Shown: positions 6,822-60,383, counted from the stretch's first letter. The stretch is DNA of 64,000 bases from Iphione sp. A-MEVVRFRX5 (GCA_976226885.1 OZ320314.1:31496001-31560000), one strand, 5' to 3'. The notes: generated by a model not told the origin, from the sequence alone. A program made the numbers and translations.

Positions 6822-7388
6822 GGATATTCTCAGCGTGGTGTCTGGTTTATAGTCAGTTGGACTACAATCACAGCTCTAGAGTCAGAGGACGTGAATCAGC
6901 AGAATGATAGAGTCGCATTGTACTAGACACTTTTCAATTTCTTAGTTCCATACAGTGTTCTCTCTCTTTAAGTAGAAGTTATCTAATTTGTAAGGATGTT
7001 CTCAGTATGGTATCTAGTATATAGTCCGCAGGCTACAATCACAGCTTTAGAGTAAGAGGAGGCTGATCAGCAGAAGAGAAGTAATAGATTCACCACAGTT
7101 CATTCTCCCAATTCTATACAGTTTTCTCTCTCTATAAGAGGAAGGTGGCTAATGTATTAAGATGTTCTCAGCATGGTGTCTAGTATATAGTCAGCAGGGT
7201 ACAATCATAGCTTTAGAGACAGAGAAGCTGAATCAGCAGATGTGGAGTAAAGGATTCACCACTGTTCACTCTCTTAGTTCTATACAGTTTTCCCTCTCTT
7301 TAAGTAGAAGGCAGCGAAATCATTAGGATGTTCTCAGCATGGTGTCTAGTACAATGTATATAGTCAGTGGACTACAGTCACAGCTAGT
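6822..7388. repeat. Tandem repeat, about 166-172 bp unit, about 3.4 copies
   Basis: Unit start (g/a)gat(a/g)ttctcag recurs at about 6822, 6994, 7160 and 7326, each followed by tggt(g/a)tct(a/g)g...tacaatca(c/t)agct. Units are diverged. Confidence 0.85.
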
Positions 7389-8820: not shown

Positions 8821-8872
8821 AAATGGCAGAACAGGACAGAAAGTCGCTTGACCCACTGAAGCGAGTGTATAA
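8821..8872 (+). CDS. Candidate coding exon, possibly containing a start codon (MAEQDRKSLDPLKRVY)
   Basis: tatatag acceptor, ATG at 8823 in AAATGG context, only one open frame, strong AA|gtaagc donor. I found no convincing phase-2 partner exon. Confidence 0.35.
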
Positions 8873-10437
8873 GTAAGCAGCAGCAATAATTCACAATTTT
8901 GGACTGTCCTATGGGCAGTGAAATCCGAAACCCCACTCCTTGAACATGTACCATAGCTCTTACCGGTAGAGCAATGTGCCAGTGAGTTTCAGTTATAGTA
9001 GCCGTCGCCATCAGGGACGTACTAGGGACTACTGGTACGGTTCCTTGTTTGCAGAGGTCTTCATTGTCTCTGTTGAGAAGAGACCTCACGCCTGTCCACT
9101 ATCCAACCGAATCCACTATAGATCGCTGGGACGTGTCAGCATCAGATTCTTTTAACTGCGCCATCGTGTTCTACATGGCAGTAGCATACATGCACACTCC
9201 CTTCGTCTCCTTCACTGTACGTTCGTGCTCCGTTTATTCTACTGGCAGGAGATGACAGCTCAGTACAGTTCTCGCTCCTATACTGGTGGGTAAGGGCATT
9301 GGCTTCAGGGAGGACCGGCTATTTAAGGTATAGGTCAATATTAAAGGGCATGGGTTGTGTATGCATGTATAATGGCACCAGTTTCTCACAGTAAAGGAGA
9401 CTTGGGGCGGGGACTCTCCGTTGGTTGGATATTTAAGATGATAAATTCCAGAATGTTTTCTCTTCCTTGCATCATGGCGGCTTAAAAGTCTCCACTATGA
9501 GGCAAGGTTACACTGGCAATAGAAATGTAATCTTTTGAGATAGGAGGATACTCACTATAAAACTACCAAACTGAGATCGTCTTCTAGAGGAGCCATTGGG
9601 GAAGTGTCCGCCACGAAGCTACAGCGCAGGTTATTTTCTTTTTTTCTCACGTCATAATGGGCTCCGCACCATGCAGACCAAATGTGTTCTTTGGAGATCA
9701 TCTTTCATATTTGTGGCCTCACTACTTAAAAACTCAGGTGTCTTGCTAACGCTGAAATACGAGCAGGTATGATAGCTAGGTTTGATGTCTGCATGTTGTC
9801 TTTAAGCTCGGCACTGAACAAGTTATTTTGCAGTAACATTAGTGGTCCCTCTCCTGACCTTTGACTAGGGTTCTCAGAGAACCAAGGTCGAAGCTGTAGA
9901 AACTATAATGTATGGTTCTGCTCCAGTCGGTCTTGTTAGAAATAAGCTTTCGGGGGTATAATGGTCACTGTGAATTCGCGGTTCTTTGTTTCATTACCAT
10001 GTCATCTTGCTGTTACTGGAATTACTGTAGGAGTACATGTATGTTGGGACATGTTGTTAGGGTAAGAGAGTTTTAAAGGGAGGGTGGAGGGAGAAAAGAG
10101 AGATGGAGGCCGAGAGAAAGTGACTGACATCGAGAAAAGGCAGATAAGGATTCAACATGAATGAGGAAATAATTGTTTACTAAATAAGTAAGCATCAGAT
10201 CTGTTTGGTCGTGAGGAATGTACGTGTTTGCATGTTTCTGAATGTGACATTTAATTGATGCATAAGAAGTTGATTCCATGCATCCTATAAGCACTGACAT
10301 TCATCATTAATCAAAGCCATCCGTTTATGTATGCTTATCTCTGAACAGGCATACACCTCAATAGACTAGGACTCCAATCCTTTAGATTTATGCGTCAAAC
10401 AGTGATTTATTGATTGTAATTTTTTGTATCTCCGCAG

Positions 10438-10611
10438 GAGGTCGATTCTACCGTTTGGTCGGGCGAGTGGAGTACTTCCGGTTCGTCTGGCTCCATGCCG
10501 CCTCCGCGGGCCGGAAGTGGCGTCGGCGCGCGGGCGGGGACCCGTCCCGCCAGCCGCACGTCACTCGGATCTGTAGCGTCCAGCATTGGCTCAGCCGACG
10601 CCTTCGCTGAC
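10438..10611 (+). CDS. Coding exon, phase 0-0, Ser/Gly-rich (EVDSTVWSGEWSTSGSSGSMPPPRAGSGVGARAGTRPASRTSLGSVASSIGSADAFAD)
   Basis: tttttgtatctccgcag acceptor, GAC|gtgagt donor, 174 nt, GC-rich island, only one frame open across it. Linkage to the downstream gene is inferred, not shown. Confidence 0.75.
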
Positions 10612-15643: not shown

Positions 15644-17734
15644 ATTGTACCCGATATGACAAAGAGTACGCGACACCTAATTTCTTCACATGTGTCACAA
15701 ATTTCTTGTATGAGAGATTTGTGACTTCCTCAGGTAATTTATTCCATATTCCAGCTAGGAGGTATCCTATCGACTTTTTATATGATTCCCTCCTCAGCAT
15801 ATCCAAATCTGTCGTTTCTTGCCCTCTCTCACATTATATATGCCAGGTCTAGAAAATGCCCTATTGTATCCCAACTGCAATAACCTTTTATCCCTGACCC
15901 TAATAAAATCTGCTTCAACCTCCCTTAAATTAAATCTTTTAAACGCCACATTTAACATTGTTTTCCTGACCCTCATTAACTTAGCAAATGTACTCCATTT
16001 AGTGTTCGTGTAGATTACAGATACGTACTCAATTACAGGCAACAGCATCGTGCATACAACCATTAATGCAGTACTGGCATCCAACATAAACCTAATTTTC
16101 CTAAAATAATGCAACTTGCCCATACCCCTCTTAATTAGCCTTCTCTGTGCTATCGACATAGTTAACCTCTCATCTAGTACTACACCGAGATACTCCACCT
16201 GATTGACAGTCTCAATAGACCCTTCTCCCCTTTTATAACCCCTACAAACTATTTTCTGATTCAAAGTTCCATACCTAAATTGGACACATTTGGTCTAGGC
16301 TATATTTACCATAATCTTACACTGACAGGCCCATTTATGAAAGTCCGCACACACACGCTCCACATTCATTCCTAGGTCTCCTTGTAAGATACCACTACCA
16401 CAACAGCCACGTCATCTGCATACATAAAACAAGTAACCCCTTCTAAATGTAGTGGTAGATCGTTAATGAAAATTAAAAACATCAGCAGCCCTAGTATTGA
16501 GCCTTGGGGGACTCCACATGAAATTTCACCTATTGATGACTTTGTTCCATTGCAATAAACATATTGTTGTCACATTGATAAATAACTTTTCAACCATTTC
16601 ATTACCGACCCTCCCAACCCACAGGCTTTAAGTTTTTTAATTAAGATTTCATGATTTACAGAATCAAAAGCCTTTTTAAAATCAATGAATAAACCCACAA
16701 CTAACTTACCCCCATTTAATCTATTGTGAATTGCATCTGTTAAATCCATGATAGCTAGGTCAGTTGACATGCCAGGACGAAAACCGTACTGTCTGTCACT
16801 AAAGAGTTTGTTTTCTGTTAAATGCTTGAAAATTTTCCTATGGACCACCCTCTCCATAACCTTACTGAAGACAGTCAGAAGGCTAATAGGCCTATAATTC
16901 CCTATAACATTTGGGTCCCCCCCTTTCCACAATGGGACCACCTTTGCCATTTTCCAGTCAGTGGGTATCTCACCGCTTCTGTAACTGTCATTTAACAAGT
17001 CTGTAAATTTCTGAATTGATCCTAAGATTATTTTCTTCATCAACCTAGTTGGTACATCACCTACCATGGACGCCTTATTTTCATTTAACTTTTTAACTAT
17101 GTCACTTACTTCTTCACAAGTAGTACTAATCGGCATAGATAAGTCATTTGCCACTACAGGCAAAACAAATGTAGCATGGTTACTAGAAGATAATATTTCC
17201 TGTATCCCACCTCCAATACTGAGAAAAAATTCATTTATCCCATCTGGGACACAATTTGCCTCTACTTCTGCGCCTTCTTGATAGTAATGACTGAGTCATC
17301 CATGGGTTATATTCACGCCGCACCCTCAACTTCCTTAGGGGATTGTATTTGTCGTATAGAGTCAAAATAATAGATTTCATCACACACCACCTATTATTCA
17401 CTCCACTAATGCTATCAACCATTTCATTCACACACACATTTATTTCTTGCAACATTTCATCCTCATCACAAACTCTCTTCCTTCTTACGTACACAAACTT
17501 GATACATACCCTATTTCTTCCCCTACCAATACTAGCTGTCACAGCCCCATGATCAGTGAATGGGGTATCAACTACTGAGTGACTCCAAATCATCTCCTTA
17601 CAATTTGGTATTATCAAATCCCTCAACGTTTCAGACTGTTCTGTTATTCTGGTAGGAGACGCTATTATTTGATTCCCATCAACTGACAACATAAAGTCCT
17701 CTAACCTATCCCTATTTACAGATGACTTCCTCAT
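15644..17734 (-). mobile_element. CR1/L2-type LINE (element A): ORF2 reverse transcriptase and C-terminal half of the endonuclease, degenerate
   Basis: YRPISLLTVFSKVMER, QYGFRPGMST, FIDFKKAFDSVNH, GVPQGSILG, YADD, VEYLGVVLDERLT, C-terminal WNKLPEEV; endonuclease end PTRIT...DLII...TDH. Several frameshifts. Confidence 0.95.
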
Positions 17735-20660
17735 TTTTGTTGGCCTCCTTCAGTCTCGTAGACTATGGATTTGCACATTTTTTTTGTGGCTGTACAGGCC
17801 TATTCTTGATAGACATGTCCTGCCACATATCCCACAGGTGTATCCGGGTATCAGAACACAACTTGGCTCTTTCCTGCGTGATCTCTTTTCTTCTACCTGT
17901 TGTTTTAGAGTCACTTCCAGTGTCGTAGCTCCTCTGTGCAAGGAGGCTCTCCACTTGGTGCAGTCTTTTGCAAGGTCTTGCCAAGATTGGGGGTTCAAGT
18001 TGAAAGCCTGGAGGTCTTTCTTCACCAGGTCTTTGAAGTGAAGCTTGGACTGTCCTATTGGTCTGTTTCCTGAGGCCACTTCCCCAAACAGAATGATCTT
18101 GGGGATTCTGTGATCTTCCTTTGTCTTTATGTGTCCCAGCTATTGAAGTCAGCGCTTCTTCAAGATAGTTTACATGTTGGCCAACTTTGTTCATGTGAGA
18201 ACTTCTTGGTTTGAGACTTTGTCGCTCTAAGAAATGCCGAGTATTTTTCTTAAGCAGCGCATGTGGAAAGTATTCAGTTTGCATTCCTGGTGTGAGTATG
18301 TTGTCCAAGTTTCACTTCCATAGAGTAGTGAACTCAGGATGCAAGCATTGTAGACACTGATTTTGGTGTGCGTGCAAAGTTTTGGGTTCTCCCATACTCT
18401 GGTTTTGAGTCCTGCTAGGGTACCTGCTACTTTACCTATCCATCTGTTTACCTCATTGTCTAGGGAAAGGTTATCAGTGATTGTCGACCCAAGGTATGTA
18501 AAGTCATGCACAACATCCAGTGTGTAGTTGTTGACTTTTATTTCTGGGGTCAGATTGTTGGTTGTGCTTAGAATGTTGGTCTTTTTCAAGGTTATGGTAA
18601 GTCCAAAGTCCTTGCTCTGGAGAAGTCATTGATGAGTTTTTGTAGATCATCCTCTGTGTGGGTAATAAGGGCAACATCATCTGCAAATAGCATGTCTCTC
18701 ACCAGAACTCTCTGTATCTTGGTCTTGGCCTTTAATCGACTGGGGTTGAACAGGCTTCCATCTGATCTTGTGTGGAAGTAGACACCTTCTGTTGAGTTTG
18801 CAAAGGCATGTTGGAGTAGAAGGGAGAAGAATATACCAAAGAGTGTTGAGGCAAAGACACAACCTTGTTTTACCCCACTATTGATTGCAAAGGGGTCAGA
18901 GGTAGAGCCATCATAGTGCACTGTGCCCATCATGTTGGTGTGAAAGGACTTAGTGATGTTTAGTAGCTTTGGTGGGCATCCTATGCTTTGAAGAATTTTA
19001 AAAAGTCCTTCTCTGCTGACTAGATCGAAAGCCTTTGTTAGATCTATGAAGGCTACCTAGAGTGGCATCTGCTGTTCCCTGCATTTTTCTTGCAGTTGCC
19101 TGATGGAGAATACCATGTCCTCCGTTGATCTTCCAGAGCAGAACCCGCATTGTGACTCTGGGTAAACTCTCTGTGTTAGCTTTTGGAGTCTGGATAGCAC
19201 AACTTTTGTGAAAAGCTTTGCAGTGATACTAAGAAGAAAAATGCCTCGGATGTTGTTGCAGTTGCTACGGTCTCCCTTGTTCTTGTAAAGTGTGATGATG
19301 TTGGCATCATGCATATCTTGTGGTACTTCTCCATTGTTCCAGCACTGGCAGAGGAGTTTGTACAGTAGTGCTAGCAATGTGGTTTTACCACATTTGAAGA
19401 TTTCTGGTGGTATGCCATCTTGTCATGGTGATTTGCCTGTTTTCAGTTTGTCAATTGCTTTTGAGAGGTCTTCCATTGTTGGTAGATCATCGAGTTTCTG
19501 CATTATGGGGAGTTCTGTGATTGTGTGCAGTGCATGTTCAGCTACGTGGTTCTCACATTGGTATAGTTCAGAATAATGGTCAACCCAGCGATTTAGTTGA
19601 TGCATTTTGTCATATATTGCCTCCCCAGTGAGTGTTTTCAGAGGGGCAGTTTTTGCTGTCCTTGGTCCAAGAGCCTTTTTTATGCCATCGTACATATTGT
19701 GGATGTTTCCTGTATCTGCTGCTGTTTGGATGCTTTGGCATAGCTCCAGCCAATAGTTGTTTGCACAATGTCTGGATATTTGCTTGACTTTGTTGCTGAT
19801 GTTTCTTAATTGTGATTTAGTTGCAACACTTGGATTTTGCTTGTATGCTAATTCAGCTTTTCTTTTTTCTTCTAAAAGTGGTCCCATGGTTTCCAAGTTG
19901 GCTTCAAACCAGTCGTTTGTAGTTCTGGGCTTCCTTCCAAAGGTGGACAAGGCGGCCTGATGTATGTTGTCTCTTAGCCTGTACCAGTAAGATGGGGTTT
20001 CGTTGTCTGGCAGGTTGTGGATGGCTTGGCTGAGGCTCTCTTTGAAGGCTGATACTTTCTCAGGATGAGTGGTCAAGAAGGTGTTGATGCACTTTTCCTG
20101 GCTGGCTTAGCAAGGTGTAGCTTTTTAGATCTTAGCTTCACTTTAGAGCAGACTAGGGAATGGTCTGTGTTGCAATCTGCACTGTGATAGGTGCGTGTGA
20201 TGAGTATGCTGCAGGTTTGACCGTCTGGTGATGATTAAGTCCAGTTGGTGCCAGTGCTTGGATTGAGGGTGTCTCCATGATACCTGGTGATGGCCTTGAT
20301 ATTAAAAAATGTATTTGTGATGCATAAGTTGTGGAAGGTGCAGAGTTCCAATAGGCGTTGACCATTTTCATTTATTTTTCCCACTCCAAAGTGTCCTAGA
20401 GTGTTGGGCCATGGGATGTTATCTGACCCAGCTTTGGCATTGAAGTCGCCTAATGCCTCTGTTGTCCGTGTGTTGCCACAAGGAGGCAGCAATTGGGGCT
20501 TGCTGGTGGAGAGGCTGTGTACTGGCAGGAGAGACTTACGCACTCGGCTCTCTTTTTACAGCAAGCTGCTAACCAGCAGTGAGAGCTGAAAGCGAGAGTT
20601 GCAAGCACTACACGCTATGCTAACACACTTGACGCATTCACCAACCATATGAACACACAG
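17735..20660 (-). mobile_element. RTE-clade (BovB-like) LINE (element B) inserted into element A, with an internal deletion in its 5' part
   Basis: GDFNAK endonuclease, RT motifs (LYKNKGDRS, QCGF, DL.KAFD, GVKQGCV, FADD, FTYLGS, LLYGSETW), C-terminal CGICGRTCLSRIGLYSH and 3' end gagactgaaggaggccaacaaaa. Flanked by a 21-bp TSD ATTTACAGATGACTTCCTCAT at 17714-17734 and 20661-20681. Confidence 0.95.
20466..20658 (-). ncRNA. Partial HDV-like self-cleaving ribozyme fold in the RTE 5' UTR (3' part apparently deleted)
   Basis: P1 5' strand GUGUGUU (20658-20652), 2 nt from the element 5' end, pairs 7/7 with AACACAC (20474-20468). P3 GCC/GGC encloses L3 UCCUUGU, followed by GG for P1.1. The long J1/2 is structured (GCUUGCUG/CAGCAAGC, GAGAG/CUCUC). 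J4/2 and the P2 3' strand were not found. Confidence 0.65.
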
Positions 20661-21270: not shown

Positions 21271-21712
21271 CTGGAGGGTCTATCACCCTGGAGGGGTAGC
21301 CCGAGAGTGGTCGCGGGCGTCAACTTCGACGACTTTGATGGTCTCTCACCCTGGAGGGGTTGGCCGGGGTGGTCGCGGGCGTCAACGGGGACGGCTCTGA
21401 TGGTCTCTCACCCTGGAGGGGTGAGGCTGAGAGTCGTCGCGGGCGTCAACTTCGAAGACTTTGATGGTCTCTCACCCTGGAGGGGTTGGCCGGGGTGGTC
21501 GCGGGCGTCAACGGGGACGGCTCTGATGGTCTCTCACCCTGGAGGGGTGAGGCTGAGAGTCGTCGCGGGATGTCGAGGCATCAACGGGGATGTCTTTGAT
21601 GGTCTCTCACCCTGGAGGGGTGAGGCCGAGAGTGGTCGCGGGATGTCGAGGCGTCAACTGCGACGTCTTTGATGGTCTCTCACCCTGGAGAGGGTCTCCC
21701 GAGAGTGGTCTC
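21271..21712. repeat. GC-rich minisatellite, 62-73 bp units, 7 cores, inside element D
   Basis: Core tcaccctggag at 21284, 21347, 21409, 21473, 21535, 21608 and 21681. Intervening parts are homologous to each other; units 2 and 4 are identical. Confidence 0.9.
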
Positions 21713-21729
21713 TCATCTCTTTGAGTCAC

Positions 21730-21853
21730 TTTTAGTCATAAAATTCAGCACTTTTTGGACTTAAAGTCATCAAATTCAGCACTTTTTGGACTTTTAGTCA
21801 TCAAATTCAGCACTTTTTGGACCTAAAGTCATCAAATTCAGCACTTTTTGGAC
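21730..21853. repeat. 31-bp tandem repeat x4 inside element D
   Basis: Unit ttttagtcat(a/c)aaattcagcactttttggac repeated four times, followed by a short (AG)n. Confidence 0.9.
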
Positions 21854-22311
21854 GTTTCATATGTTAATAGAGAGAGAGAGAGAAAGGGATATGATTTCAA
21901 GCCCAGACCCCATCCACAATCACTTTGCGACCATATTCGCTATTACGACCATTTTGGGCCGGCCCAAGTGCTGGTCGCAAAGCGAGTTTTTCCTGTAGTC
22001 ATAGAGAATTGGATCTGAATCTTAGGAACAAGGTAAAAACAAGCTTCACCATTACTCATTATAAAAATGTTTTACAGTGCAAGATGACTTCCAACATAGT
22101 TGCAAATAGTTGGAATAAATGTAAACTAACAATAGATGACGGGCTTGAGCCTAAGGACTTCAAAAAGGAAACAGCAAGACTTATTTTTGACAATGGTTAA
22201 GTTTGTAAGTTTGTAATATTGTAACTAACAAAGGAAGCATATACATAAGAATTAGCGAATGTATATTCGATTATGTATATGTTGAATTCAGAAATAAATA
22301 AATAAATAAAT

Positions 22312-22700: not shown

Positions 22701-23399
22701 CATATCGAATGTTGTTTACGCAGCCCTATGCCACGGATATGAATGGAGGTGAGAAAAGTGATAACAGTGCTAAACAGCATCAATGAATAGTAAGCGTTAG
22801 CAGTGATAAGGAAAAACAAAATTTATCTAAGAGTCATGGCTGTGTTCACCAGGTGTAAAGGATGATGCAGTCGTTCCAGGTGTTATCTGAATTTCACATC
22901 GGCTATTTTCCAACACAAACGTTAGCTGCTGTCGATACCCCAATACCTTGTTACACCCCTTCTTGATTAATTCTAATTGATCTTCTCCAATCGAACAGAT
23001 CTTTCCTGTTGACAAACAGTCCTTTTACTTTCTCTTGCCACAGGCTACCAAGCGCAAAATAGGAAACAGGAAAGTCCCCAAGTCAACTTCTGATGCAGCC
23101 AGCCTGGGCGGACAAACCGGTAGGGAGTCGACAAGTACTTGTAAACACCTGTCTTCATTCCTTCATTATGTTGAAGATGTATGCTTTTAGCTGCATCTTG
23201 ACGTAAAAATCCCGGCCAATTGAGCTCTCACGATGAAATATAAAACTTGATAACTGTTACTTAAAAAAAAAAAATTTGATGACATTGATATTTACGTGTC
23301 TGTGGTTCCCTATTCTTTACCCGTTGCCGACTATGCAGGAGTAATCACCGGAACAATTTATTCCAACATACTTCATTTGGGGAGTAGTTGACCTTTAGC

Positions 23400-25346: not shown

Positions 25347-25424
25347 GCCGCTCTCACCCCGCCTTCCGCAAAGCCCGTATCATGGGCGTGCTTAACGCTA
25401 GCCTGGGGCGTCTCCAGGATGACA
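25347..25424 (+). CDS. Repeat exon R1, phase 1-1 (RSHPAFRKARIMGVLNASLGRLQDD)
   Basis: ggttttctccag acceptor, A|gtgagt donor, 78 nt, peptide homologous to R2-R6. Confidence 0.85.
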
Positions 25425-25940
25425 GTGAGTAGAACAGTGGTGCATGACACAGCAGGACACCCCGACACCCAGCTCGCTGCAACAAATATTTGGTGTTGTT
25501 TTTTTTTTGCAGAATGTAAATATTTGCTTGTACATGTGTACGCGAACACTAAATTCAATATGGCAGTAGAAAATCCCAAATAGGCAGCATGTATTTTCCT
25601 TATACATTCAACTGATCAGCTTCTCTGAAAGGCTGCTTTCCCTTCAATGGCAGTAGTGGTAGCGGGAGTCTTTTTCTATGAGAAAGGGTACAGAGAACTA
25701 TTTCCAAATCTAACTTGAAATGTATAGTAACCGTTTTGTGTTCCGCCATGGGATCTACAGGTCGGGAGGGTTGGAGTGGCATGACAAAAGGACTAGACTT
25801 ATGAAAGTGTCAGATATGATGTTGTACAAACGGACGGTTGGATATTTGTGTTTAGAAATAATGATACTAACATGGATCCTTTTACAACGGCTTTATGGTG
25901 CAACAAACTGGATCCGAGCACAGTAGATTTATAAACGCAA

Positions 25941-26640
25941 AAGGGAATAGTATGCAAAATATTTGTTTGTAATTTATGAACAGATTTGATTTTTTTCGTG
26001 AACTTGAGTAAATAAGTGAGTGGCCTTGCATGGTAAATAAGTCATACAAATCTCCTTATTAAGCTATCTCCTCAGTTTCATACCAGCAATTATTCTCCCT
26101 GGTTTATGAAAATAGCTTTTGTATACAAAGATGTAACTACTATTAAAGGTATTGCTTCTGCGTACTTATCACTGTGCACACATAGTGAGCAGATATTTTG
26201 TAGGAATGTATCATATATCTTACTACGTTACTCTAGTGCCTGGACCTCAGTGCATCTACCTGTGGTCATACGTAAGAAGAAAGAAACTCAATGGGAATAG
26301 TATGCAAAATATTCATTTGAAATTTATGAACAGATTAGAAGTTTCTTTGTGAACTAGAGTACATGAGTGAGTGGCCTTGCATGGTAAATAAGTCATACAA
26401 ATCTCCTTATTGGGTTATCTCCTCACTTTCATACAGGCAAATATTCTCCCTGTTTTATAAAAATAGCTTTTGTATACAAAGATGGAACCACTGGTAAAGG
26501 TATTGCTTCTACATGCTTATCAATTTGCACACATAGTGAGCAGATATTTTGTAGGAATGTATCATATATCTTACTATGTTACTCTAGTGCCTGGACCTGA
26601 GTGCATCTACCTATGGTCATATGTAAGAAGAAAGAAACTA
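25941..26640. repeat. Tandem duplication of an about 350-bp segment (2 copies)
   Basis: gggaatagtatgcaaaatatt...gtaagaagaaagaaact occurs at about 25941 and about 26291 with scattered substitutions. Confidence 0.9.
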
Positions 26641-27909
26641 AACAGGAAGAGACATGTATTAATTTCAATCTGCATGAATACTGCACAAAAGTTTTAGGGA
26701 CATTGAATATGCTTGCTCAGACATATGGCATTAAAAACCTACTTTGCACTTGAAAGGTTATCAATTGTCAAGAATCCCTTTATCCCGGACGTTACTGATG
26801 AGGCTTCTTTTGGCCTTCGTATGTGTCAGAAGTATCCGGTAAAAATGGGGATTAAGAGCTATTATACTGAGTAACAATAAGGCTGCATGTGGGAATGGCT
26901 GGATATTAACATTCAAATTTAAATAGTTCAGTGTGTCTGTAGAGATTTCAACCCTGGATTGTGGCAATACAGTAGAACGCCCCTAGTCAGGACACCTTTG
27001 TTTTTTCTCAAACTCTCCCTTGATATATAGAAATTATAATGTGTTTTTTTTTCAATAACATTCCCACTAGAGGCATGTTGCAATGAACCAATTGCTGAAT
27101 GTTGAAGTAACGGGTAGCGCAGACACAATTGTCACTGAATTTTGACATTGTCACAGTTTTAAGTGATTCGATTGGCCAGTTCCCATGAGTACGTCATAAT
27201 TAGTTAAAGTTATGTCCATGGTAACCGTTACTTAAACATTCGGCGATCGGCTCATTGGAGACATATCTTCAAGCCGGCTTCCTGGGTGTCCCTGGTAATG
27301 GACAAATATGCATCACCACTGGTATATTACAGACTAATAATCATAAAGAATTTACTTAAGCATTTTGAAGAGTTAAAACCTCATTGGAAAACAATCTACA
27401 CACTTTTCTCTTGCATGTACATCTATAGCCGTAGCGGTTTGTAGAAAGGGACGTACGATTTCGACGTGTGAATGCGCTTGAATTGTGTATTTCGTTGATA
27501 TGTGTCACTTGGCAATTTAAGATAAGACACAGTCTGTGAATTTGCGTTATCATCTAGACCGAAAGAACTCAATTTGAATCATAAAATATTTCAAGCTTAA
27601 CATGAACGATGTCTACTTCGCAATCGTTTTTGTCAGTTTTCATATAGATTTTTAACATCTTTTTTCCACTGGAATATGTTACATACAGTTTGCATATTGT
27701 TTCAGTAACAAAACTATTCGTGGAATACTTGTACTATGAGCATGGTACAATGAGCTGTGTACAGCTGTATGAGTTTGTACATGATATGAGTAATTCGAGA
27801 GAAATGAAGGATTTTCCGTCATGATAATATTTGTAAATAGTTTCCATAGCGAGACAAAGTATAGTATGCTTTCTATCTGTACATCATGATTTGTTTAAAC
27901 CCATGTGAG

Positions 27910-28014
27910 GTCCGAGTGCTAGTTCTACCCGAGGATCCATAGGTAGGGCAGGACTACGGAAGGCACGCATGCTCGGAAGTTTGACAGCAGGTTTTGGCTC
28001 TCAGAAGGGGGCAA
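27910..28014 (+). CDS. Repeat exon R2, phase 1-1 (PSASSTRGSIGRAGLRKARMLGSLTAGFGSQKGA); alternative acceptor would start it at 27943
   Basis: Strong A|gtaagt donor and conserved motif. The acceptor is either tgag| (105 nt) or ccatag| (72 nt); both are phase 1. Confidence 0.8.
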
Positions 28015-30790
28015 GTAAGTACATTTATGCGAACATGATTGTTACTAACATAGCTAGTGTATAATACTAACGCATGTTTACTCAATAGATGTGCCATCAC
28101 CTAGAGTCAGTGTTATTGCAATTTGTTCGCTTTAGAGCGAACCTGCGTAGGGAACTCTCATCCGGGAATGTTACGATGCACTGCATGCTCATTTACGTTG
28201 TTTTAGCGTTGAAAAAACTGAAGACGAAAAAAAGGATTGAGCATGACCAGATTGTGCGCATTTTCAATGAGCAATCAGCTACTTTGATTTGAAAACGGCT
28301 TGCGTGACGCTACCTCGATGCACTGACAGGCCACAGTGATCCTCAGTATACCTCAAGGCGATAGATATTCATCTGCATAAAGTAGAAACGACTGAATAGT
28401 AAATAAACGTGTTGTTCTGGAGAGGTAAGAAAGTACTAAAGCGAACAGACGGTTGATATTTATCATATTTCACTTCTGTTGCCTGAATGGGACCAGTCAT
28501 CGTGGCCGGTAGCGATGATACTCTCATCCATACGGTTACTGCTTATACTCTCTGACAGATATCCATTACTTATAGCATCTCAGCTTCAAGATTATCTCTC
28601 CAGGAGTGTTCGACATTAGTACGTTGGTTTATCACTCCGGATACCCTTCCACCCTGCCCATCATAGGATGCCCTCTGCATCGCATGACATTTATCCTGCG
28701 TTAAGTTGCATCCCAGACAAGGGCCAGCGTTGGCACCGCCTTGGCGGACTGACACATCGGTCATGCTGATTACTGGGCAAAGTGTGCAGGCTGGTTAGCG
28801 GCCTGAGTGGAAGGAGGTGGCGGGTGGGGGGGAGCGCGGGTGGGGTGGCTGCGGGGGAGCAGGACTGGGAGGAAAACCTGCTAGAGAAGAGGCCCTCCAT
28901 TTTGCCTTGTCCTCGTTTGCTGCTTGCGACTTCAGCGAGAGGCATAATCCTTGTACTCGTCTCCAGCAGAGAGCACCTTAAACGGAGCACTTCACACGCG
29001 ACTGTGAGGTAAAAGAGCAAAAAAAACCCCCAAAATCAGCGTAATAACATGACTTTTAACTGTTGGAAGATGGAATATACAGCATACCATATCACTGGAC
29101 TGCAGTTTTGGCGCTGGGTTTAGATTGAAATTGTTGGAGAAAGCTTAATGTTTAATGTGCAATGTACATTCACCTCTCATCCTCGACCGTTTTAGTTGTG
29201 TAGAAAAAGGGTTCGATCTGTTATCAAAATTCTGGGTCTGGACAACTTTGTTGAGTGTTTACATAATTTTTATGTATAGGGTTATATTTATATAGTGTAC
29301 ATGTATGTGAAACATTGCTTTAATGGCTGAAAAGTGGTAAATTATTTTGTTCAAAAATGAAAAAAATACTGCAGATATTATTATCGTCAAATACTTCTGG
29401 AATTGAAGCAATCCGGCCAATGTTGCCTTCATTCTTGAAATCATTCGTTTATCTCACGTTTCAGGCAACGGTCTTATAAATATGTAACAACTGGGTACCA
29501 AACCTACAGAACATATAAATGGATGTGAGCGGACTGTATATTAAAGGGAACCGCACCAGTCGTTATGGCTTTTGCTTGCGGTTGTGAGCAGCTGAGTAAT
29601 TAGAAGCTTAGGAATAAGCACAACCGAATCCCACCCGTCGATTGTTATGACAAAATATAAAGGTCGGCGAGACATTCGGTCTGTCCGAGGAGTAGCTGCA
29701 AACAATAACGTGAAGGGACCCATCGGACAGGCATATGTCTTATTCTATAGGATATTTTACCATTTGTTACCGTGGTATCTCACTAAACAACGTTTCATCA
29801 ATGGACGGCCTGGCCTCGGAAGAAAACACCGACGCAATTTGATTGCTGTCCACGACTGGATCTTTATTACCAGGCGTCAGAGAGGTTTTACGCTGTGCAT
29901 GGGGGCCGATGCCGCTCGCCTCCCGGTTATTTGTGGCTAGCCGTGTCGGAGGCAAAAAACACCGCGATGCAACTAATCACAACGCCGACAAGCCTTTAAG
30001 GTCCAAGCCTGTTGATTGTTGGGGCCTGTACCATTTCATCAGGCATATGCTACTTAATAGAGGAAATAAAACAACTTCATGCTACCTAATAGAGGGGAGA
30101 AAACCATTCTAACTGCACTTTCCACTATGCTAGGTGCTTAGCTTAATAGAACTAACAATAATTGGTTTACTTGGTTAAGCACTACGTGAGATGTCATTTC
30201 GATTTGTATTTGATTGGGTGAATACAATTGCGAGTTGCCACATTCAATAATGAAGTATGCCATACGCAACAACCAATCAATATAAGAATCCAAAGCCACG
30301 GTATTATGATGTTATAAAGATCTGAAAGCTGTATAGATATGGAGTGTGATAAAGACTCTCCAGAGACAGACAAGATGCATTTAAATTTTAATCTATCATT
30401 GCTATCTCGGTACCGTTCTGTTGATAACGCAACACTTAAATAATCATTATGGGTGACTCATTTTCAATCCTGCCTGTGAGTGCAACAGTCGCTGTCATAG
30501 GATGAATAAGTAAACATATACATTGTAGTAGGTAGTCAATCTAGCATGCGGTTGCTATTCAAGACCAAAGAGGAAGCAGCTTTCTGTTCAATAGGATTAA
30601 TGTCGGTAATCCATACAAGACGTAGAACGGTTTTTAAGGTCATAAACCACCCGAAACAGTACATGAGTATGATTCAGGGTTTCCAAGGAACACACAAATA
30701 TAACATCCGTATCCGTTTGGGTATATCATCCTATCGTAGATTGGCTTCACGCATGTCATGTTACTACCGTTTTTTAACTCACAATCAAAG

Positions 30791-30886
30791 CCCCCAGACC
30801 GGCTGCCTCGGTGGATCGACACGCCGCCTTCAGGAGGGCACGTGTCATAGGTGCGCTGTCATCAGGCTTCAGTCAGGCATCGCCAA
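30791..30886 (+). CDS. Repeat exon R3, phase 1-1 (PRPAASVDRHAAFRRARVIGALSSGFSQASP)
   Basis: caatcaaag acceptor, A|gtaagt donor, 96 nt, conserved motif. Confidence 0.85.
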
Positions 30887-32149
30887 GTAAGTGAATCTTG
30901 CGAAACTTCGATCTTCTATCAACGTGCTCAGACTGGCCTTGGAACACTTTAACCGGTTTTTTTTCCGACGGGCTGGTTATCCTAAGTGACCGAAGAGCCA
31001 TTGGCTCAACTTTGAAGTGTCCCCACCCAACGACGACACTCACATCATTTCCAGTGAATTTCACTGATATGTCCATTACTCAGATATCTGCGTTGCTCAG
31101 ATATCCTAGGTGTATTCCTGTGAAGAATTCATCAGTAGATGTACATGAAAGACCGAGTAATCAATGAAGAGGTCCGGGTACTTGCTGCGCTTTTCCTCCC
31201 GTTAAGAATCGGTGACGTCTGACTTTGTGTTCAGTTACAGACGCAAAATAGGTATTTGCAGCAATGTGCAGATTGAAATTCAATTCCTGTGCCATTTTGT
31301 ATGTCTTTATACTTGATATCCATTGGGCATGCTGAGGTGCTGTCACTAATTTTAAGAAAATAAATGATCAACTATCGCTGCCTGATAATTCATATTCATC
31401 TCAGTTCCATCTTTTCTTCATTTCAATGCTCATTATTATGTTAATCAGTTCCCACAGTAAGATGTGTTCCTTATGAAAATTGGTCGTCATTGATTTACAC
31501 CATTTAATTAGAAGCCAATAATTCTAGCTCATGCCACCAACAGTCGACGTCTGAATGGCTTCAGGATAATATAAGCAGTCATTATTGGTGAATGGTGTTC
31601 CTCTCTTAAGAATCCTATTGACAACCTGTGAACATTCGGGGGCCCTAATTGCCGCTGGTGTATGGAACAGGCTTAATCCAAGGATTCTTTCTTAACCTTT
31701 GTTTCACTGCGAAACCAGGGCCTTGTATTTCCTCACAGATTCTGAGCAATTAATGAATCGTACATTGATATCCAGAGAGGAATGGATTGGACCTGTGCAG
31801 AGTTACAAACCATTCTAGAAACGGTTGTATAGAGTGCACCTGCAAATGGAAGAAAGGGCATTCTTTACTTTCGACATATTTACCTGATCGAAAGTGCTAT
31901 ATAGGCCTACATATACTGTATTGCGAAAAACTTCTTACATTTTATCAGATTAGTGTTGTAAGAAAACTCACCAGCAAAGCCTACGCCATAAAAGGGTCTT
32001 CCATACAGGATGGCTTTCACATGTAGATAGCAGTCGTGAGTTGAACAGGTCCCTGCGGTACTTTTTATGCCATCTCAGCATCTATGAATACTATCTTATT
32101 TCAAACAAAGTTGAAGAGATCTTATTCATATCGCTATATCTATACCCAG

Positions 32150-32245
32150 AGGAAAGGGCCCCAGTTCACCAGCCTGGTAACCGGCTCGCTGGTCTACGAA
32201 AGGCCCGGATAATGGGAGCTATGACAGCAGGCATGAGGAGCTCAT
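32150..32245 (+). CDS. Repeat exon R4, phase 1-1 (ERAPVHQPGNRLAGLRKARIMGAMTAGMRSS)
   Basis: tatacccag acceptor, T|gtgagt donor, 96 nt, conserved motif. Confidence 0.88.
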
Positions 32246-33027
32246 GTGAGTAAATTCTTTAGTAGATATAGTGTGTAGGTGAGAGGATCCAGTAAACACT
32301 AAATCATACTAACACAGATGTACAAGAACATGGATTAATTGGCTCCACTAGTGTATTTAACATGCCGTTTCTTATTTAACCTAAATTCAAGTGTCGGCGA
32401 CCTGCTTCTCCAAATCGTACAGTTACGTTCCACGAACACCATACGTATTGAAATAAATGGGTTAGGTTAGAGTAGAAAGGCTCGATGTATATTTACTAAC
32501 TTGGCATGCTTAAGTCTGATGAATATGCACGATCTAGATTGAAATAGTACCGTGACTTAAACAGCATGCTACCACTGCCCTAAATAGAAGGCAATGCGCT
32601 CCGGATGCATTAAGACGAACGAACAGCACCAAGCTGAACTAATATGCATGGATTTGCATGTAAAATAATACTCTCTAACATACAGATTTATTTTTCGTGC
32701 ACGGACTTCGACTTCACCTTTTGCTTTTTGTTCTGACCGCAGCATTCGAGGCTCTTTAATGAAATAAAGAATATAAAAAACTGCCTCTACTTCAAAAGAA
32801 CCGAGCGGCAAACATGTAGCGGATCAGCAGAAAAGAAATTATATCAAATTAATTCGTCATGTAAACTAAGGCAATTTGGCGAATGTCTGAGCATCGTTTT
32901 AGTAACATTTTCACCTGACCATGTATGCCCTGGGACGAATCTTTTATGTACAACACTGACAATTAATGACCAGTCGCTGGCGGAGAGATGGCTTTTAATG
33001 GCATTTCCCTTTTCGAACGTACGCAAG

Positions 33028-33123
33028 ATAATGACACACATACTGGACAACCTGGAAATCGCCTCGCTGGTCTGCGGAAAGCCAGAGTGATCGGGACCAT
33101 AGCGGCCGGATTCAAAGGAGCAG
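33028..33123 (+). CDS. Repeat exon R5, phase 1-1 (NDTHTGQPGNRLAGLRKARVIGTIAAGFKGA)
   Basis: ttcccttttcgaacgtacgcaag acceptor, CAG|gtaaat donor, 96 nt. Shares QPGNRLAGLRKAR with R4. Confidence 0.88.
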
Positions 33124-33967
33124 GTAAATAAAACCTCACGGGGATAACTCATAAGGTGTACTCCACTTGACCTGGCACGCACAACACATTACTCCGGAAT
33201 GAATATTAATCTTAAACATAAACAGAACCCACAAAGGTACGTCCAGTGAACATTTCTATAATGTATTTTGAGTTAAAATCGTTTCATCATGACGACTGAT
33301 GTGACGATAACTAGATTATCAAAGCTCATTATCATAGCAATAAGTAATATGCACGGTGCTGGTGATCAAAGAGAAAATTCATTCATAGAAAACATGTTCC
33401 TTTTGAAGCCACATTAATGCAATTAATTTAATCCCTCGCTAGACACAGTTAATAATAATTATGAATTAAATACGTGCCAGTGACGTGGTTACCTGACTTT
33501 TGTATTTTCACTGAAGGCTATTTAACGACGGTGAGTCACAAAATTCACACATTAGTTAAGGCGTCAGTTTTGAATTGCTTTTTGTACGGGAGGGATTTTC
33601 AACCAAAGATTTATTATCTTTACGTTGATGATGTCAGCGTTTCGGGATGGTCAACTACAGCTGGTGGTTATTTCATTGGTATTTGAAGATTGATTAAATA
33701 ATTATGGTTCAGAGAGAAAAGAGGGAGGAAAAGCCTGTAGGCCAGCAAAAGTAGCTAAAACACATCAGGAGATGGCCAGAGCGAGCTTAATAGCTGCAAT
33801 AGGAGGTTCTTAAGTTCGCCGTTCTGCCACTCCCCTACCCTTCACCCCCACCCACCCACCCCACAAAAAGCACACATTCTCACCCTGTATTATCGAATCC
33901 TCTCACATCGTCATACACTGTCGGAAACCGCGCGCTTTCCCGCTCCTCGTCTACGTCAAACTCTCAG

Positions 33968-34063
33968 GGCAGGACGTGGGCGGCGGAAGTTCAGCTGCTG
34001 GCTTCCGGAAGGCTCGCGTCATTGGAGCGATCAGTGCGGGCATGGCTCATGCCGAGATTGAAT
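33968..34063 (+). CDS. Repeat exon R6, phase 1-1 (QDVGGGSSAAGFRKARVIGAISAGMAHAEIE)
   Basis: aaactctcag acceptor, T|gtgagt donor, 96 nt, conserved motif. Confidence 0.88.
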
Positions 34064-42770: not shown

Positions 42771-42976
42771 CGAGCCTTGGAGCTGTTGATGAGGATGCTG
42801 ACGCCACAGCGGAAGATCAGGATGCCATTGACAAAGAAACGGAGTTGCTCAACAACTTGTACGACGTGTTGGGTGAGTGCTCGCGGCAGCGGCTGCGAGC
42901 ATTGCAGATGGGCCTGCGAAAGTTTGCCAACATAGAGGCGAGAATAAGCGTCAAGGAACTACAGGGCGTTTTCCAG
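42771..42976 (+). CDS. Coding exon of an EF-hand-pair protein (C1orf87-like), phase 1-0
   Basis: catttcag acceptor, CAG|gtagag donor. SLGAVDEDADATAEDQDAIDKETELLNNLYDVLGECSRQRLRALQMGLRKFANIEARISVKELQGVFQ. Phase-consistent with the next exon. Confidence 0.85.
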
Positions 42977-43665: not shown

Positions 43666-43786
43666 GACAATAACGTGAAGATTCCTGCCAGAACCTTCCA
43701 GCTCCTCCAAGAGAAGTTTGAGGATCAACTTGGTGTGGATTATGAAAGAATGTGGCGGTCTCTTGTTGCGGCCCAGGGACGGACTG
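43666..43786 (+). CDS. Coding exon, phase 0-1 (DNNVKIPARTFQLLQEKFEDQLGVDYERMWRSLVAAQGRT)
   Basis: ccattccaag acceptor, G|gtacga donor. Completes a degenerate EF-hand pair. Confidence 0.85.
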
Positions 43787-44384: not shown

Positions 44385-44593
44385 GACGCGACAGTGTCAT
44401 GGCTCAGAATTCCGTCAATGACGTCGAGTCGTCCTACCTCACCATGACGCAAGAGGAGAGGGATGCCGACCTACACAGGCGTCTAGTAGCTCAGTTTGCA
44501 CGTGCCAAGGACTCCAAGTTCACCTTGAATGATTTGCGGCTGGCTTTGCAATACCGCGACAAGAATAAAGCGGGCAAATTACCTCGACAAGAC
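44385..44593 (+). CDS. Coding exon, phase 1-0, EF-hand loop DKNKAGKLPRQD
   Basis: tctttcacctacag acceptor, GAC|gtaggt donor. ...LNDLRLALQYRDKNKAGKLPRQD. Confidence 0.9.
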
Positions 44594-45721: not shown

Positions 45722-45819
45722 GTGTTGGACGTGTGCGGTCAAAAAAACCTGCCGATATACGGTGCGCTACTCACCAGTCTGCTTGGTCGTTGTGATGAAA
45801 TGCAGGATGGAGAAATCAC
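45722..45819 (+). CDS. Coding exon, phase 0-2 (VLDVCGQKNLPIYGALLTSLLGRCDEMQDGEIT)
   Basis: ttccttcttcag acceptor, AC|gtaggt donor. Second EF loop DEMQDGEITWPE spans this exon and the next. Confidence 0.88.
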
Positions 45820-49124: not shown

Positions 49125-49342
49125 CTGGCCGGAACTGATCTCTTTCCTCGAGCGTGCGCAGGAGGGGGTTAGCCAGGATCCGCTCCTGTCGACGATGGAC
49201 TCGGCGACGCTCCGGCAGTCTCTCGATGGCGGGACGCGGCCGGGCACGGCTGCCCGGTCACTGGCCGGCGGCAAGATTTCCATTATGTCGGCGACGAAAG
49301 TTGCCAAACAGATGGCTAACACAAAGGAACAAGGCAAAAAAG
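49125..49342 (+). CDS. Coding exon, phase 2-1 (WPELISFLERAQEGVSQDPLL...KQMANTKEQGKK)
   Basis: atattttcag acceptor, AAG|gtaccg donor. Phase fits both neighbours. Confidence 0.9.
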
Positions 49343-49585
49343 GTACCGCTTATCTATACAGCTATACGGGTATATACATACGTGTGCGTGCGTGTTTGTA
49401 CTTCTTTATTTTACGTGTTCAATTAAACTGACCTCTTCTGAGCAGGATTATCGCTTCCAGGTTGCAGGTGAAAAGGGGAGACCTACTCTGATGACCCAGG
49501 CTCACTCATGTATTTGTTCACTCTCCCTGGAATTCTGTTAGGAACCTCAAAATTGTGAATAATAATCTGATATCTATTCTTACAG

Positions 49586-49914
49586 TTAAGGCATTTCACC
49601 CCTTCCCCCCTGGATATGACCCTTCAGACTTTAAACGTAGCTCCCATCGGTTGTCTTCAGGACCGACCTCCACAGTCGGAAAAACACCAAAAAGTCCACG
49701 GTCACCCACCAAGACTCCCAAATCTCCCAAGTCGGCTGGACGAGCGGGAAGGACTGCAGGCGGCAGTGGATCTGGAGGGAAGGGGTCGGCGAAGAAAGGC
49801 AAAAAGAAGAAGAAAAAGAAAAGGACGCCGGGGACGACAAGCGGCCGAAGCGATACGGAAGGCGAAACGGACGGCGAGGGTTTGAGTGACGTGGGGGAGC
49901 TGACTGACGGGGAG
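49586..49914 (+). CDS. Coding exon, phase 1-0, basic low-complexity region (KTPKSPRSPTKTPKSPK; KKGKKKKKKKR) with an acidic end
   Basis: tattcttacag acceptor, GAG|gtaggt donor, 329 nt open, GC-rich. Confidence 0.9.
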
Positions 49915-52954: not shown

Positions 52955-53113
52955 CCGGATGGTGCCGAAGGCAGCCGAGCAACTCCGAGCGCAGTGGCGC
53001 TCCTAGCGGTCACCAAGAACAGACTTTCCCAGTGGACTCCGCGTCGTAATCTGGACAAGACCAACCTGACCGCCAGGCATGCGCGCAGCCTCATCAAGGA
53101 GGCCTTCAACAAG
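52955..53113 (+). CDS. Coding exon, phase 0-0 (PDGAEGSRATPSAVALLAVTKNRLSQWTPRRNLDKTNLTARHARSLIKEAFNK)
   Basis: Pyrimidine-rich tract ending ttaactaag|, donor AAG|gtgata, GC-rich. Exact acceptor uncertain. Confidence 0.75.
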
Positions 53114-60221: not shown

Positions 60222-60383
60222 TTGGCGCGCGAGCCCATACCTCCAAACTGAAGGCGGTCATTCGTCTGGGCGCCCTGGCGCGGGCGGCAGGGGCACACGC
60301 CCGGTCGTCCGAGCCTCCCCCGGAGGCGCCCAAAGGGATACCCAAGATAGTGCCACCGCTACCTCCGACTCCCGAAGACTCCG
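60222..60383 (+). CDS. Coding exon, phase 1-1 (GARAHTSKLKAVIRLGALARAAGAHARSSEPPPEAPKGIPKIVPPLPPTPEDS)
   Basis: gcaaccag acceptor, G|gtgtgt donor, GC-rich island. Read-through would reach TGA at 60416-60418. Confidence 0.75.

What the first reader, a model, noticed from the sequence alone, without database searches (positions are those of the whole stretch)
25347..34063. Hidden array of at least six homologous, frame-symmetric exons, each encoding one conserved basic amphipathic peptide
Seen: six GT-AG exons (25347, 27910, 30791, 32150, 33028, 33968), all phase 1-1, four exactly 96 nt, separated by 0.8-2.8 kb introns. Cores: HPAFRKARIMGVLNASL, RAGLRKARMLGSLTAGF, HAAFRRARVIGALSSGF, LAGLRKARIMGAMTAGM, LAGLRKARVIGTIAAGF, AAGFRKARVIGAISAGM. 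The RKAR codons differ at synonymous sites in every copy (CGC AAA GCC CGT; CGG AAG GCA CGC; AGG AGG GCA CGT; CGA AAG GCC CGG; CGG AAA GCC AGA; CGG AAG GCT CGC), indicating old duplications under protein-level selection. Established: hydrophobic anchors at positions 1, 10 and 14 with N-terminal basic residues are typical of calmodulin-target helices, and the pattern loosely recalls the troponin I switch region (LRRVRM). I do not recognise the motif as a named domain. Inference: a modular exon cassette in which splicing sets the number or identity of Ca2+-sensor-binding peptides, either combinatorially or in a mutually exclusive way.
Basis: partly seen in the sequence, partly recalled or inferred. 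Interest (0 to 1): 0.85.

Follow-up and report, generated by a model that had tools for sequence, protein, structure and literature searches.

The report
Six repeat exons in one worm gene
Six small, related exons of one invertebrate gene each encode the same short basic helix, a conserved repeat not yet described elsewhere, but nothing yet shows that splicing picks among them or that they bind calcium sensors.

Summary
Six + strand exons (78, 105 and 4 x 96 nt) have AG/GT borders and are all phase 1-1. Each encodes the core [AG][GA][LF]R[KR]AR[VIM][ILM]Gx[ILM]xA[GS][FLM]. A profile of the six finds exactly these six in the six-frame translation.

They belong to a gene of at least 40 kb. Fifteen exons (10438-53113) join into 719 codons without a stop.

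Two other genomes carry the same gene with the same phases. One has seven repeat exons and the more distant one has a single copy, the R1 type. Between the window and the seven-copy genome, core synonymous sites are saturated (pS 0.70) and pN is 0.19. Intron flanks are not conserved.

The motif matches nothing in Pfam or PDB sequences. Among 1.84 billion protein representatives it matches only one ORF fragment, from the seven-copy genome.

AlphaFold2 predicts a helix over the core. Its hydrophobic moment is no higher than in shuffles, so "amphipathic" is not supported. The invariant residues form an Arg pair and a Gly/Ala ladder.

The most likely reading is an ordinary exon-per-repeat protein whose repeat copy number changed during evolution. 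Splicing control and calcium-sensor binding are untested because no RNA run was listed. Mutually exclusive use is unlikely.

The parts
10438..10611 (+). Upstream conserved exon U0 (phase 0-0). It is Ser/Gly/Ala-rich. The probable start codon is the Met at 10495, which is followed by PPPR in all three genomes.
   Evidence: tblastx against the seven-copy genome gives 64% identity over 66 aa. tblastn against the third genome gives 63%. The start codon is an inference.
23044..23119 (+). Exon U1 (phase 0-1), a basic linker that hands phase 1 to the first repeat exon.
   Evidence: It is conserved in the seven-copy genome (47% over 34 aa) and recognisable in the third genome.
25347..25424 (+). Repeat exon R1 (78 nt, phase 1-1), core PAFRKARIMGVLNASLG. 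This repeat type is shared by all three genomes.
27910..28014 (+). Repeat exon R2 (105 nt, phase 1-1), core AGLRKARMLGSLTAGFG.
   Evidence: It pairs with the second repeat of the seven-copy genome.
30791..30886 (+). Repeat exon R3 (96 nt, phase 1-1), core AAFRRARVIGALSSGFS.
32150..32245 (+). Repeat exon R4 (96 nt, phase 1-1), core AGLRKARIMGAMTAGMR.
33028..33123 (+). Repeat exon R5 (96 nt, phase 1-1), core AGLRKARVIGTIAAGFK.
33968..34063 (+). Repeat exon R6 (96 nt, phase 1-1), core AGFRKARVIGAISAGMA. It is the best-conserved repeat, with 23 of 31 residues identical to the last repeat of the seven-copy genome.
42771..42976 (+). Exon A (phase 1-0): an acidic stretch followed by helices, the start of the conserved C-terminal domain.
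   Evidence: (72% identity).
43666..43786 (+). Exon B (phase 0-1).
   Evidence: (80% identity).
44385..44593 (+). Exon C (phase 1-0), with the EF-hand-like loop DKNKAGKLPRQD.
   Evidence: (84% identity).
45722..45819 (+). Exon D (phase 0-2), which carries most of the second EF-hand-like loop, DEMQDGEITWPE. The loop is completed in exon E.
   Evidence: 75% identity.
49125..49342 (+). Exon E (phase 2-1).
   Evidence: 66% identity. In the seven-copy genome E and F form one exon.
49586..49914 (+). Exon F (phase 1-0): KSP-type repeats, a lysine run and a conserved acidic tail. It ends at a donor-like GAG|GTAGGT that is present in all three genomes.
52955..53113 (+). Possible further exon G (phase 0-0). 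Whether it belongs to this gene is uncertain.
   Evidence: It has 32-34% identity with the seven-copy genome in a colinear position. It was not found in the third genome.

Best explanation
The six exons are genuine coding exons of one large + strand gene (at least 10438-49914, perhaps to 53113). They arose by ancient tandem exon duplication.

Each exon encodes a flexible Gly/Ser/Pro-rich linker of about 10-15 residues followed by a helix of about 20 residues. The invariant residues of the helix are an Arg pair and a ladder of small residues at i, i+4, i+8 and i+12 ([GA]-A-G-A). Hydrophobic residues lie on the opposite face.

The default reading is that all six exons are spliced in. The product is then an exon-per-repeat protein: a disordered N-terminal half carrying six copies of one docking helix, followed by a helical domain with a degenerate EF-hand-like pair and a charged tail.

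The phase 1-1 symmetry is a consequence of how the array arose. It also let copy number change in evolution, with one, six and seven copies in three genomes.

The function I commit to is multivalent docking: each helix binds the same kind of partner through its conserved Arg plus small-residue face. The single most likely partner class is an EF-hand lobe, either calmodulin or centrin type or the protein's own C-terminal pair, at about 25%. Cytoskeletal or other acidic surfaces follow at about 20%, membranes at about 15% and self-association at about 10%.

Shown here: the exons, the frame, conservation, copy number, the helix prediction and the absence of any known family. Inferred: constitutive inclusion, docking and the partner.
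For: Exon borders, phases and an unbroken 719-codon frame over 15 exons are. The seven-copy genome gives the same exon order and phases and a 700-codon frame with seven repeats. The third genome has U0, U1, one R1-type repeat exon (phase 1-1) and then exons A to F. For the repeat cores between the window and the seven-copy genome, pS is 0.70 (saturated) and pN is 0.19, giving a rough omega near 0.1. Conservation stops at the exon borders. The repeat-exon donors are the strongest in the gene. AlphaFold2 on a 13-copy alignment predicts a helix over residues 12-33 with block-mean pLDDT 85-87. R, A, R and G are invariant, and K and A nearly so. Their helical-wheel angles place the small residues in one stripe. 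Two EF-hand-like loops 36 residues apart are.
Against: There is no RNA evidence at all, because none was listed. Inclusion of every exon is therefore an inference. The 5' end and the 3' end of the gene are unresolved. The helix prediction rests on a 34-residue peptide with a shallow alignment (pTM 0.36). The hydrophobic moment is unremarkable, which weakens simple calmodulin-target or membrane-helix readings. No partner was tested. The spliced protein could not be sent to Pfam or to a fold search because it has no reference, so the C-terminal domain is identified only by loop patterns. The single weak DUF5580_M hit (E 0.11) was not reproduced in the seven-copy genome's exon or in the exact exon frame.
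Confidence: 0.55

Rival explanations
1. The array is a cassette module: regulated exon skipping sets how many, or which, docking helices the protein carries in a given tissue.
For: Every repeat exon is phase 1-1, so any subset stays in frame. The protein design tolerates different numbers of repeats: one, six and seven copies in three genomes. From general knowledge, tau, titin PEVK, nebulin and troponin T use such arrays in this way.
Against: Symmetry is required for the duplication itself and so is not diagnostic. The donor sites of the repeat exons are stronger than those of the other exons. The 200-nt intron flanks are not conserved between the window and the seven-copy genome; one of 22 tests reached z = 2.8 and the rest were noise. 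No RNA run was available.
Confidence: 0.3
2. The six exons are mutually exclusive. One exon per transcript is chosen, so the isoforms differ in the identity of a single helix.
For: The exons are homologous, tandem and of the same phase. The third genome makes do with a single copy.
Against: Exon lengths differ (78, 105 and 96 nt) and only the 17-residue core is conserved, while the linkers vary freely. No intronic segment is complementary to more than one other intron, so there is no docking/selector layout of the kind described in PMC6071210. The introns are 0.8-2.8 kb, so there is no steric block. All lengths are multiples of three, so double inclusion would not be removed by frameshift and decay. 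The number of copies differs between the two closer genomes, six against seven.
Confidence: 0.04
3. Each helix is specifically a Ca2+-sensor target, binding calmodulin, centrin or the protein's own EF-hand-like pair. The protein is then a multivalent scaffold or an autoinhibited sensor.
For: Hydrophobic residues at positions 1, 10 and 14 occur in 13 of 13 copies tested, and net charge is +3 to +5. A helix is predicted. An EF-hand-like pair lies in the same polypeptide. From memory, there is a loose likeness to the CaMKII and calcineurin calmodulin-binding segments; that is a lead, not a test.
Against: The hydrophobic moment is not above shuffles. The invariant residues are Arg, Ala and Gly rather than the hydrophobic anchors. 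A profile of the repeat finds no chain in the PDB, which holds many calmodulin-peptide complexes, at E<=10. The EF-hand-like loops lack canonical ligands at position 5 or 3 and fail PROSITE PS00018. The minimal 1-10 and 1-14 patterns are very permissive.
Confidence: 0.25
4. The matches are not exons. They would be fragments of a dispersed repeat or a chance open frame.
For: None was found. The introns contain transposon-derived sequence and tandem repeats.
Against: The copies lie in the same order and phase in a second genome, with saturated synonymous sites but conserved peptides. Conservation ends at the splice sites. Joining them to flanking conserved exons gives one unbroken frame in two genomes, and the third genome shows compatible exon order and phases.
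Confidence: 0.02

Closest known systems
Tau/MAP2/MAP4 microtubule-binding repeats (general knowledge)
   Same: Short repeats of about 31-32 residues lie in a disordered, basic region, with one repeat per exon. Copy number matters, and in tau it is set by a cassette exon (3R or 4R).
   Different: There is no sequence relation: no Pfam hit, including the tubulin-binding repeat family, for any of 13 copies at E<=10. The core here is a predicted helix with an Arg pair and a Gly/Ala ladder, not the tau PGGG-type motif. Alternative splicing is unproven here.
Titin PEVK and nebulin exon-per-repeat arrays; obscurin tandem exon duplications (PMC9013439)
   Same: These are long runs of homologous, frame-symmetric exons made by tandem exon duplication. 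Repeat number varies between species and, in those genes, between isoforms.
   Different: Those arrays have tens to hundreds of exons in muscle giants. This array has 6-7 exons in a protein of about 700 residues, with an unrelated motif and no isoform data.
Basic calmodulin-target helices of the 1-10 / 1-14 class, and Sfi1 centrin-binding repeats (general knowledge)
   Same: The basic N-terminal half, hydrophobic residues at 1, 10 and 14, and net charge +3 to +5 all match. As in Sfi1 or myosin IQ arrays, several copies follow each other at a period of about 26-35 residues.
   Different: The helix is not laterally amphipathic. Two conserved glycines sit inside the helix. The copies are separated by flexible linkers instead of forming one long helix. 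No binding data exist and there is no sequence match to any PDB chain.
Mutually exclusive clusters of tandemly duplicated exons (PMC6071210, PMC9741552)
   Same: The exons are homologous, tandem and of the same phase.
   Different: Exon lengths are unequal, the flanks within the exons are variable, and there are no competing RNA structures. Copy number varies between species. The exons encode a linker plus a motif rather than a replaceable piece of a folded domain.

Membership tests
Calmodulin-binding 1-10 / 1-14 motif class | Bulky hydrophobic residues at positions 1 and 10 and/or 14 | tested here: met
   [LF] at position 1, [ILM] at 10 and [FLM] at 14 occur in 13 of 13 copies tested, against 6.6% of shuffles.
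Calmodulin-binding 1-10 / 1-14 motif class | Net positive charge of about +3 to +6 | tested here: met
   Net charge is +3 to +5 over the 17-residue core.
Calmodulin-binding 1-10 / 1-14 motif class | Basic amphipathic helix with a high helical hydrophobic moment | tested here: not met
   A helix is predicted, but muH is 0.18-0.35 and 26-75% of shuffles reach or exceed it.
Calmodulin-binding 1-10 / 1-14 motif class | Ca2+-dependent binding to calmodulin or another EF-hand protein | not testable with these tools
   This needs ITC, a gel shift or multimer prediction.
IQ motif (Pfam PF00612) | [FILV]Qxxx[RK]Gxxx[RK] consensus or a profile match | tested here: not met
   There is no Gln at the key position and no Pfam family at E<=10 for 13 copies.
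Mutually exclusive exon cluster | Exactly one exon of the cluster in each transcript | not testable with these tools
   No RNA run was listed.
Mutually exclusive exon cluster | An enforcing mechanism: competing docking/selector RNA structures, steric hindrance or a frameshift on double inclusion | tested here: not met
   No shared complementary intronic segment was found. The introns are 782-2776 nt and all exon lengths are multiples of 3.
Exon-per-repeat protein from tandem exon duplication | Homologous exons in tandem, each holding one repeat, with symmetric phase and an unbroken joint frame | tested here: met
   The same holds in the seven-copy genome.
Exon-per-repeat protein from tandem exon duplication | Purifying selection on the repeats | tested here: met
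   pN is 0.19 against pS 0.70 over six orthologous cores. The flanking introns are not conserved.
EF-hand pair (PROSITE PS00018 / Pfam EF-hand families), for the downstream domain | Canonical 12-residue loop pattern | tested here: not met
   There is no strict PS00018 match. Two near-matches, DKNKAGKLPRQD and DEMQDGEITWPE, lie 36 residues apart. The first loop is identical in all three genomes and the second is largely kept in the seven-copy genome.
EF-hand pair (PROSITE PS00018 / Pfam EF-hand families), for the downstream domain | Profile or fold match | tested here: inconclusive
   Single exons give no Pfam or PDB hit. The domain is split over four exons and the spliced sequence has no reference, so it could not be searched whole.
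DUF5580 / C1orf87-like | Match to the Pfam DUF5580 domains above the gathering score | tested here: not met
   One hit to DUF5580_M scored 13 bits against a cut-off of 24 (E 0.11). It was absent for the exact exon frame and for the seven-copy genome's exon.

The most novel reading that the evidence does not exclude
The array is a valency dial for a calcium switch. Cassette splicing, and on the evolutionary scale exon gain, sets how many helices are available to bind the protein's own EF-hand-like pair in trans, or calmodulin or centrin. Isoforms with many copies would form Ca2+-dependent networks and isoforms with one copy would stay monomeric. The motif would then be a new class of EF-hand target with an Arg pair and a Gly/Ala ladder.
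Probability: 0.08. Interest if true: 0.6.

Novelty: new member of a known kind. Interest (0 to 1): 0.3.

Why it matters
The finding adds a clean, well-delimited example of repeat growth by tandem exon duplication, with one, six and seven copies of the same exon in three related genomes. It also defines a short helical motif that no public family covers.

If the partner is found, the motif could be searched for as a single-copy element in other proteins. The three-genome series offers a natural experiment on what extra copies do.

As it stands it is an uncharacterised, lineage-restricted gene with an ordinary architecture.

Tried and rejected
- RNA evidence: the look-up of sequencing runs listed no RNA run, so read laying could not be used.
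- Gene identity:
  - Pfam on single exons of the window and of the seven-copy genome gave only sub-threshold noise.
  - The DUF5580_M lead (E 0.11) was not reproduced.
  - PDB sequence searches with exon C alone and with a three-genome profile gave nothing meaningful.
  - The ESM Atlas feature search on the exon C frame gave scores of 0.83 or less with unrelated clusters.
  - Literature on C1orf87 and DUF5580 was uninformative.
- Repeat motif: there was no Pfam hit and no PDB hit. A profile against 1.84e9 representatives found only P0001. A profile of the ORF frames against 5.8e9 proteins again found only P0001.
- More genomes: an exon C search found only the seven-copy genome. Two degenerate DNA patterns in JGI metagenome contigs found nothing.
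- Gene ends: no conserved exon was found in the 10 kb upstream of U0 or between 53.1 and 64 kb.
- Several ENA gene calls near the seven-copy genome's locus contain stops in the standard code and could not be used for walking along the contig.
- The tree of the 14 repeat peptides is too short to resolve the order of duplications.
- Left out: Pfam, HHpred-type and structure searches of the spliced 719-residue protein or of its EF-hand-like domain. The spliced sequence has no reference and long sequences must not be typed.
Full report
**Observation**

Each follows an AG and precedes a good GT donor. Their lengths are 78, 105, 96, 96, 96 and 96 nt, and the reading frame that carries the motif enters and leaves each exon in phase 1.

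The quoted peptides and the differing Arg, Lys and Ala codons are correct. A profile built from the six peptides scores each copy at E 1e-14 to 2e-16 in the six-frame translation of the whole window. The next best segment scores E 1.6, so there are exactly six copies and chance is excluded.

**The gene around the exons**

Searching the profile against 1.84 billion protein representatives returned a single hit. It is a 76-residue ORF fragment from a 3.6-Mb contig of an ENA assembly. That contig carries the orthologous locus:

- It has seven repeat exons in the same order.
- It also has clear counterparts of six downstream open frames of the window, at 69-85% amino-acid identity for the best four.
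- Walking along the contig and comparing it with the window revealed two upstream exons and one possible further downstream exon.

With splice sites chosen at conserved AG and GT positions, fifteen window exons join into 719 codons without a stop. These are U0, U1, R1-R6, A-F and G, spanning 10438-53113. The seven-copy genome gives 700 codons with identical phases, and there E and F form one exon. The two models align end to end, with 41-72% identity in the repeat exons and 72-84% in exons A to D.

The 5' end is not settled. A Met followed by PPPR is conserved in all three genomes and may be the start (window 10495), but no upstream exon was found. The 3' end is also open. Exon F ends at a conserved donor-like site, and exon G is only 32-34% identical and is missing from the third genome's flank.

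**A third genome**

A search with the seven-copy genome's E/F exon found a 131-residue fragment from another ENA assembly. Its locus is compact and holds U0, U1, exons A to F and only one repeat exon. That exon is again phase 1-1, with core GFKKARIMGRLISSKFG and the acidic tail typical of R1.

By exon C identity (73% against 85%) this genome is the outgroup of the other two. Copy number is therefore one, six and seven. R1 is the shared unit. R2, R3 and the last repeat pair up between the two closer genomes. The middle repeats resemble each other most closely (where the tree itself is poorly resolved). Without a further outgroup I cannot say whether the array expanded from one copy or collapsed to one.

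**Selection**

Over the six orthologous 17-codon cores between the window and the seven-copy genome, 70% of synonymous sites differ (saturated) but only 19% of non-synonymous sites differ. That gives a rough omega near 0.1. Paralogues within the window are likewise saturated at synonymous sites and their introns share no sequence, so the duplications are old.

The 200 nt of intron on either side of each exon are no more alike between the two genomes than shuffled sequence. One of 22 tests reached z = 2.8. Conservation is therefore confined to the exons.

**What each exon encodes**

Across 13 copies the invariant residues are R, A, R and G, with K and a second A nearly invariant. The consensus is [AG][GA][LF]RKAR[VI][LMI]Gx[LMI]xA[GS][FLM], preceded by about 10-15 variable residues rich in Gly, Ser and Pro.

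AlphaFold2 on the 13-copy alignment predicts a helix over residues 12-33 of the R2 peptide, with block-mean pLDDT 85-87 in the core and a disordered N-terminal linker. This is a short peptide with a shallow alignment, so the prediction is indicative only.

On a helical wheel the small residues fall at i, i+4, i+8 and i+12 in one stripe with the two arginines beside it. The conservatively hydrophobic positions lie on the other side. The classical hydrophobic moment is 0.18-0.35 and is reached or exceeded by 26-75% of shuffles. Polarity is segregated along the sequence, with a basic start and an apolar end, rather than around the helix. The word "amphipathic" therefore does not fit.

It is, however, a permissive pattern.

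**Known families**

None of the 13 copies hits any Pfam family at E<=10. A profile hits no PDB chain at E<=10. Two large protein searches return only the ORF fragment from the seven-copy genome. The motif is therefore not a described repeat family at the sensitivity of these searches.

The downstream domain has two EF-hand-like loops 36 residues apart, DKNKAGKLPRQD and DEMQDGEITWPE. The first is identical in all three genomes and the second is largely kept in the seven-copy genome, but both miss the strict PROSITE pattern. Single-exon searches give nothing firm. The spliced domain could not be searched because it has no reference. I can confirm only "EF-hand-like, with degenerate ligands".

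**Splicing**

No RNA run was listed for this DNA, so no junction could be examined. The indirect signs lean towards plain inclusion:

- The repeat exons have the best donors of the gene, matching 7-8 of 9 consensus positions against 6-7 for the others.
- Their intron flanks are not conserved.
- There is no intronic segment complementary to several other introns, as competing-structure models of mutually exclusive splicing require (PMC6071210).
- Unequal exon lengths, free variation of the linkers, lengths that are all multiples of three, and six against seven copies in the two closer genomes also speak against mutual exclusion.

Frame symmetry cannot be counted as evidence for regulated splicing. 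A tandem exon duplicate can survive in a coding region only if it is symmetric. That the protein exists with one, six or seven copies shows that the number is not critical for folding. This is compatible with cassette use but does not demonstrate it. Tandem exon duplication with and without alternative use is common (PMC9013439).

**Verdict**

The best reading is an ordinary exon-per-repeat protein of an uncharacterised, lineage-restricted gene. It carries a string of six copies of a new short helical docking motif ahead of an EF-hand-like domain.

| Reading | My estimate |
|---|---|
| At least one repeat exon is regulated | about 0.3 |
| Mutually exclusive use | about 0.04 |
| The helices bind an EF-hand protein | about 0.25 |

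The organism is an invertebrate.

Noticed in passing
window 15797-17749, - strand: There are reverse-transcriptase-like open frames of 166-241 aa inside the 12.4-kb U0-U1 intron. They show tblastx similarity to an RVT_1 ORF that sits in the R1-R2 intron of the seven-copy genome, so retroelements of the same broad type have landed in the same gene in both genomes.
   Followed up: partly
window 21277-21857: Minisatellites with units of 62/126 nt (21277-21710) and 31/62 nt (21728-21857) lie in the U0-U1 intron. They create long spurious open frames on the + strand.
   Followed up: no
window 25943-26639: A 351-nt unit is duplicated in tandem (90% identity) within the R1-R2 intron.
   Followed up: no
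window 49343-49585 and exon F start; L001 18417-18857: The window has a 243-nt intron between E and F, and about 34 extra residues at the start of F (from KAFHPFPPGYDP to GKTP). In the seven-copy genome E and F form one uninterrupted exon. This is either intron gain or loss together with an insertion.
   Followed up: partly
L006 (ENA ERZ26222911, ctg1020555) 1389-10351: The third genome has the whole gene within about 9 kb, with a single repeat exon. A short tandem repeat that translates as LTGSSSVYRLLIDRQFIRVSSAD fills the intron just upstream of exon A.
   Followed up: partly
L003/L004 gene calls (ENA ERZ25767047): Several genes called on this eukaryotic contig contain stop codons in the standard code. 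One 72-aa call is antisense to exon U0. The calls look like prokaryote-style or alternative-code predictions and should not be read as genes.
   Followed up: yes
window 60140-60630: This G+C-rich stretch has overlapping open frames on both strands, about 7 kb downstream of exon G. It could be a promoter, CpG-rich region or first exon of a neighbouring gene.
   Followed up: no
P0003: A 165-aa ORF is 100% identical to the E/F exon of the seven-copy genome but is recorded on a different contig of 4.5 Mb. It is probably a second assembly or haplotype of the same organism.
   Followed up: no
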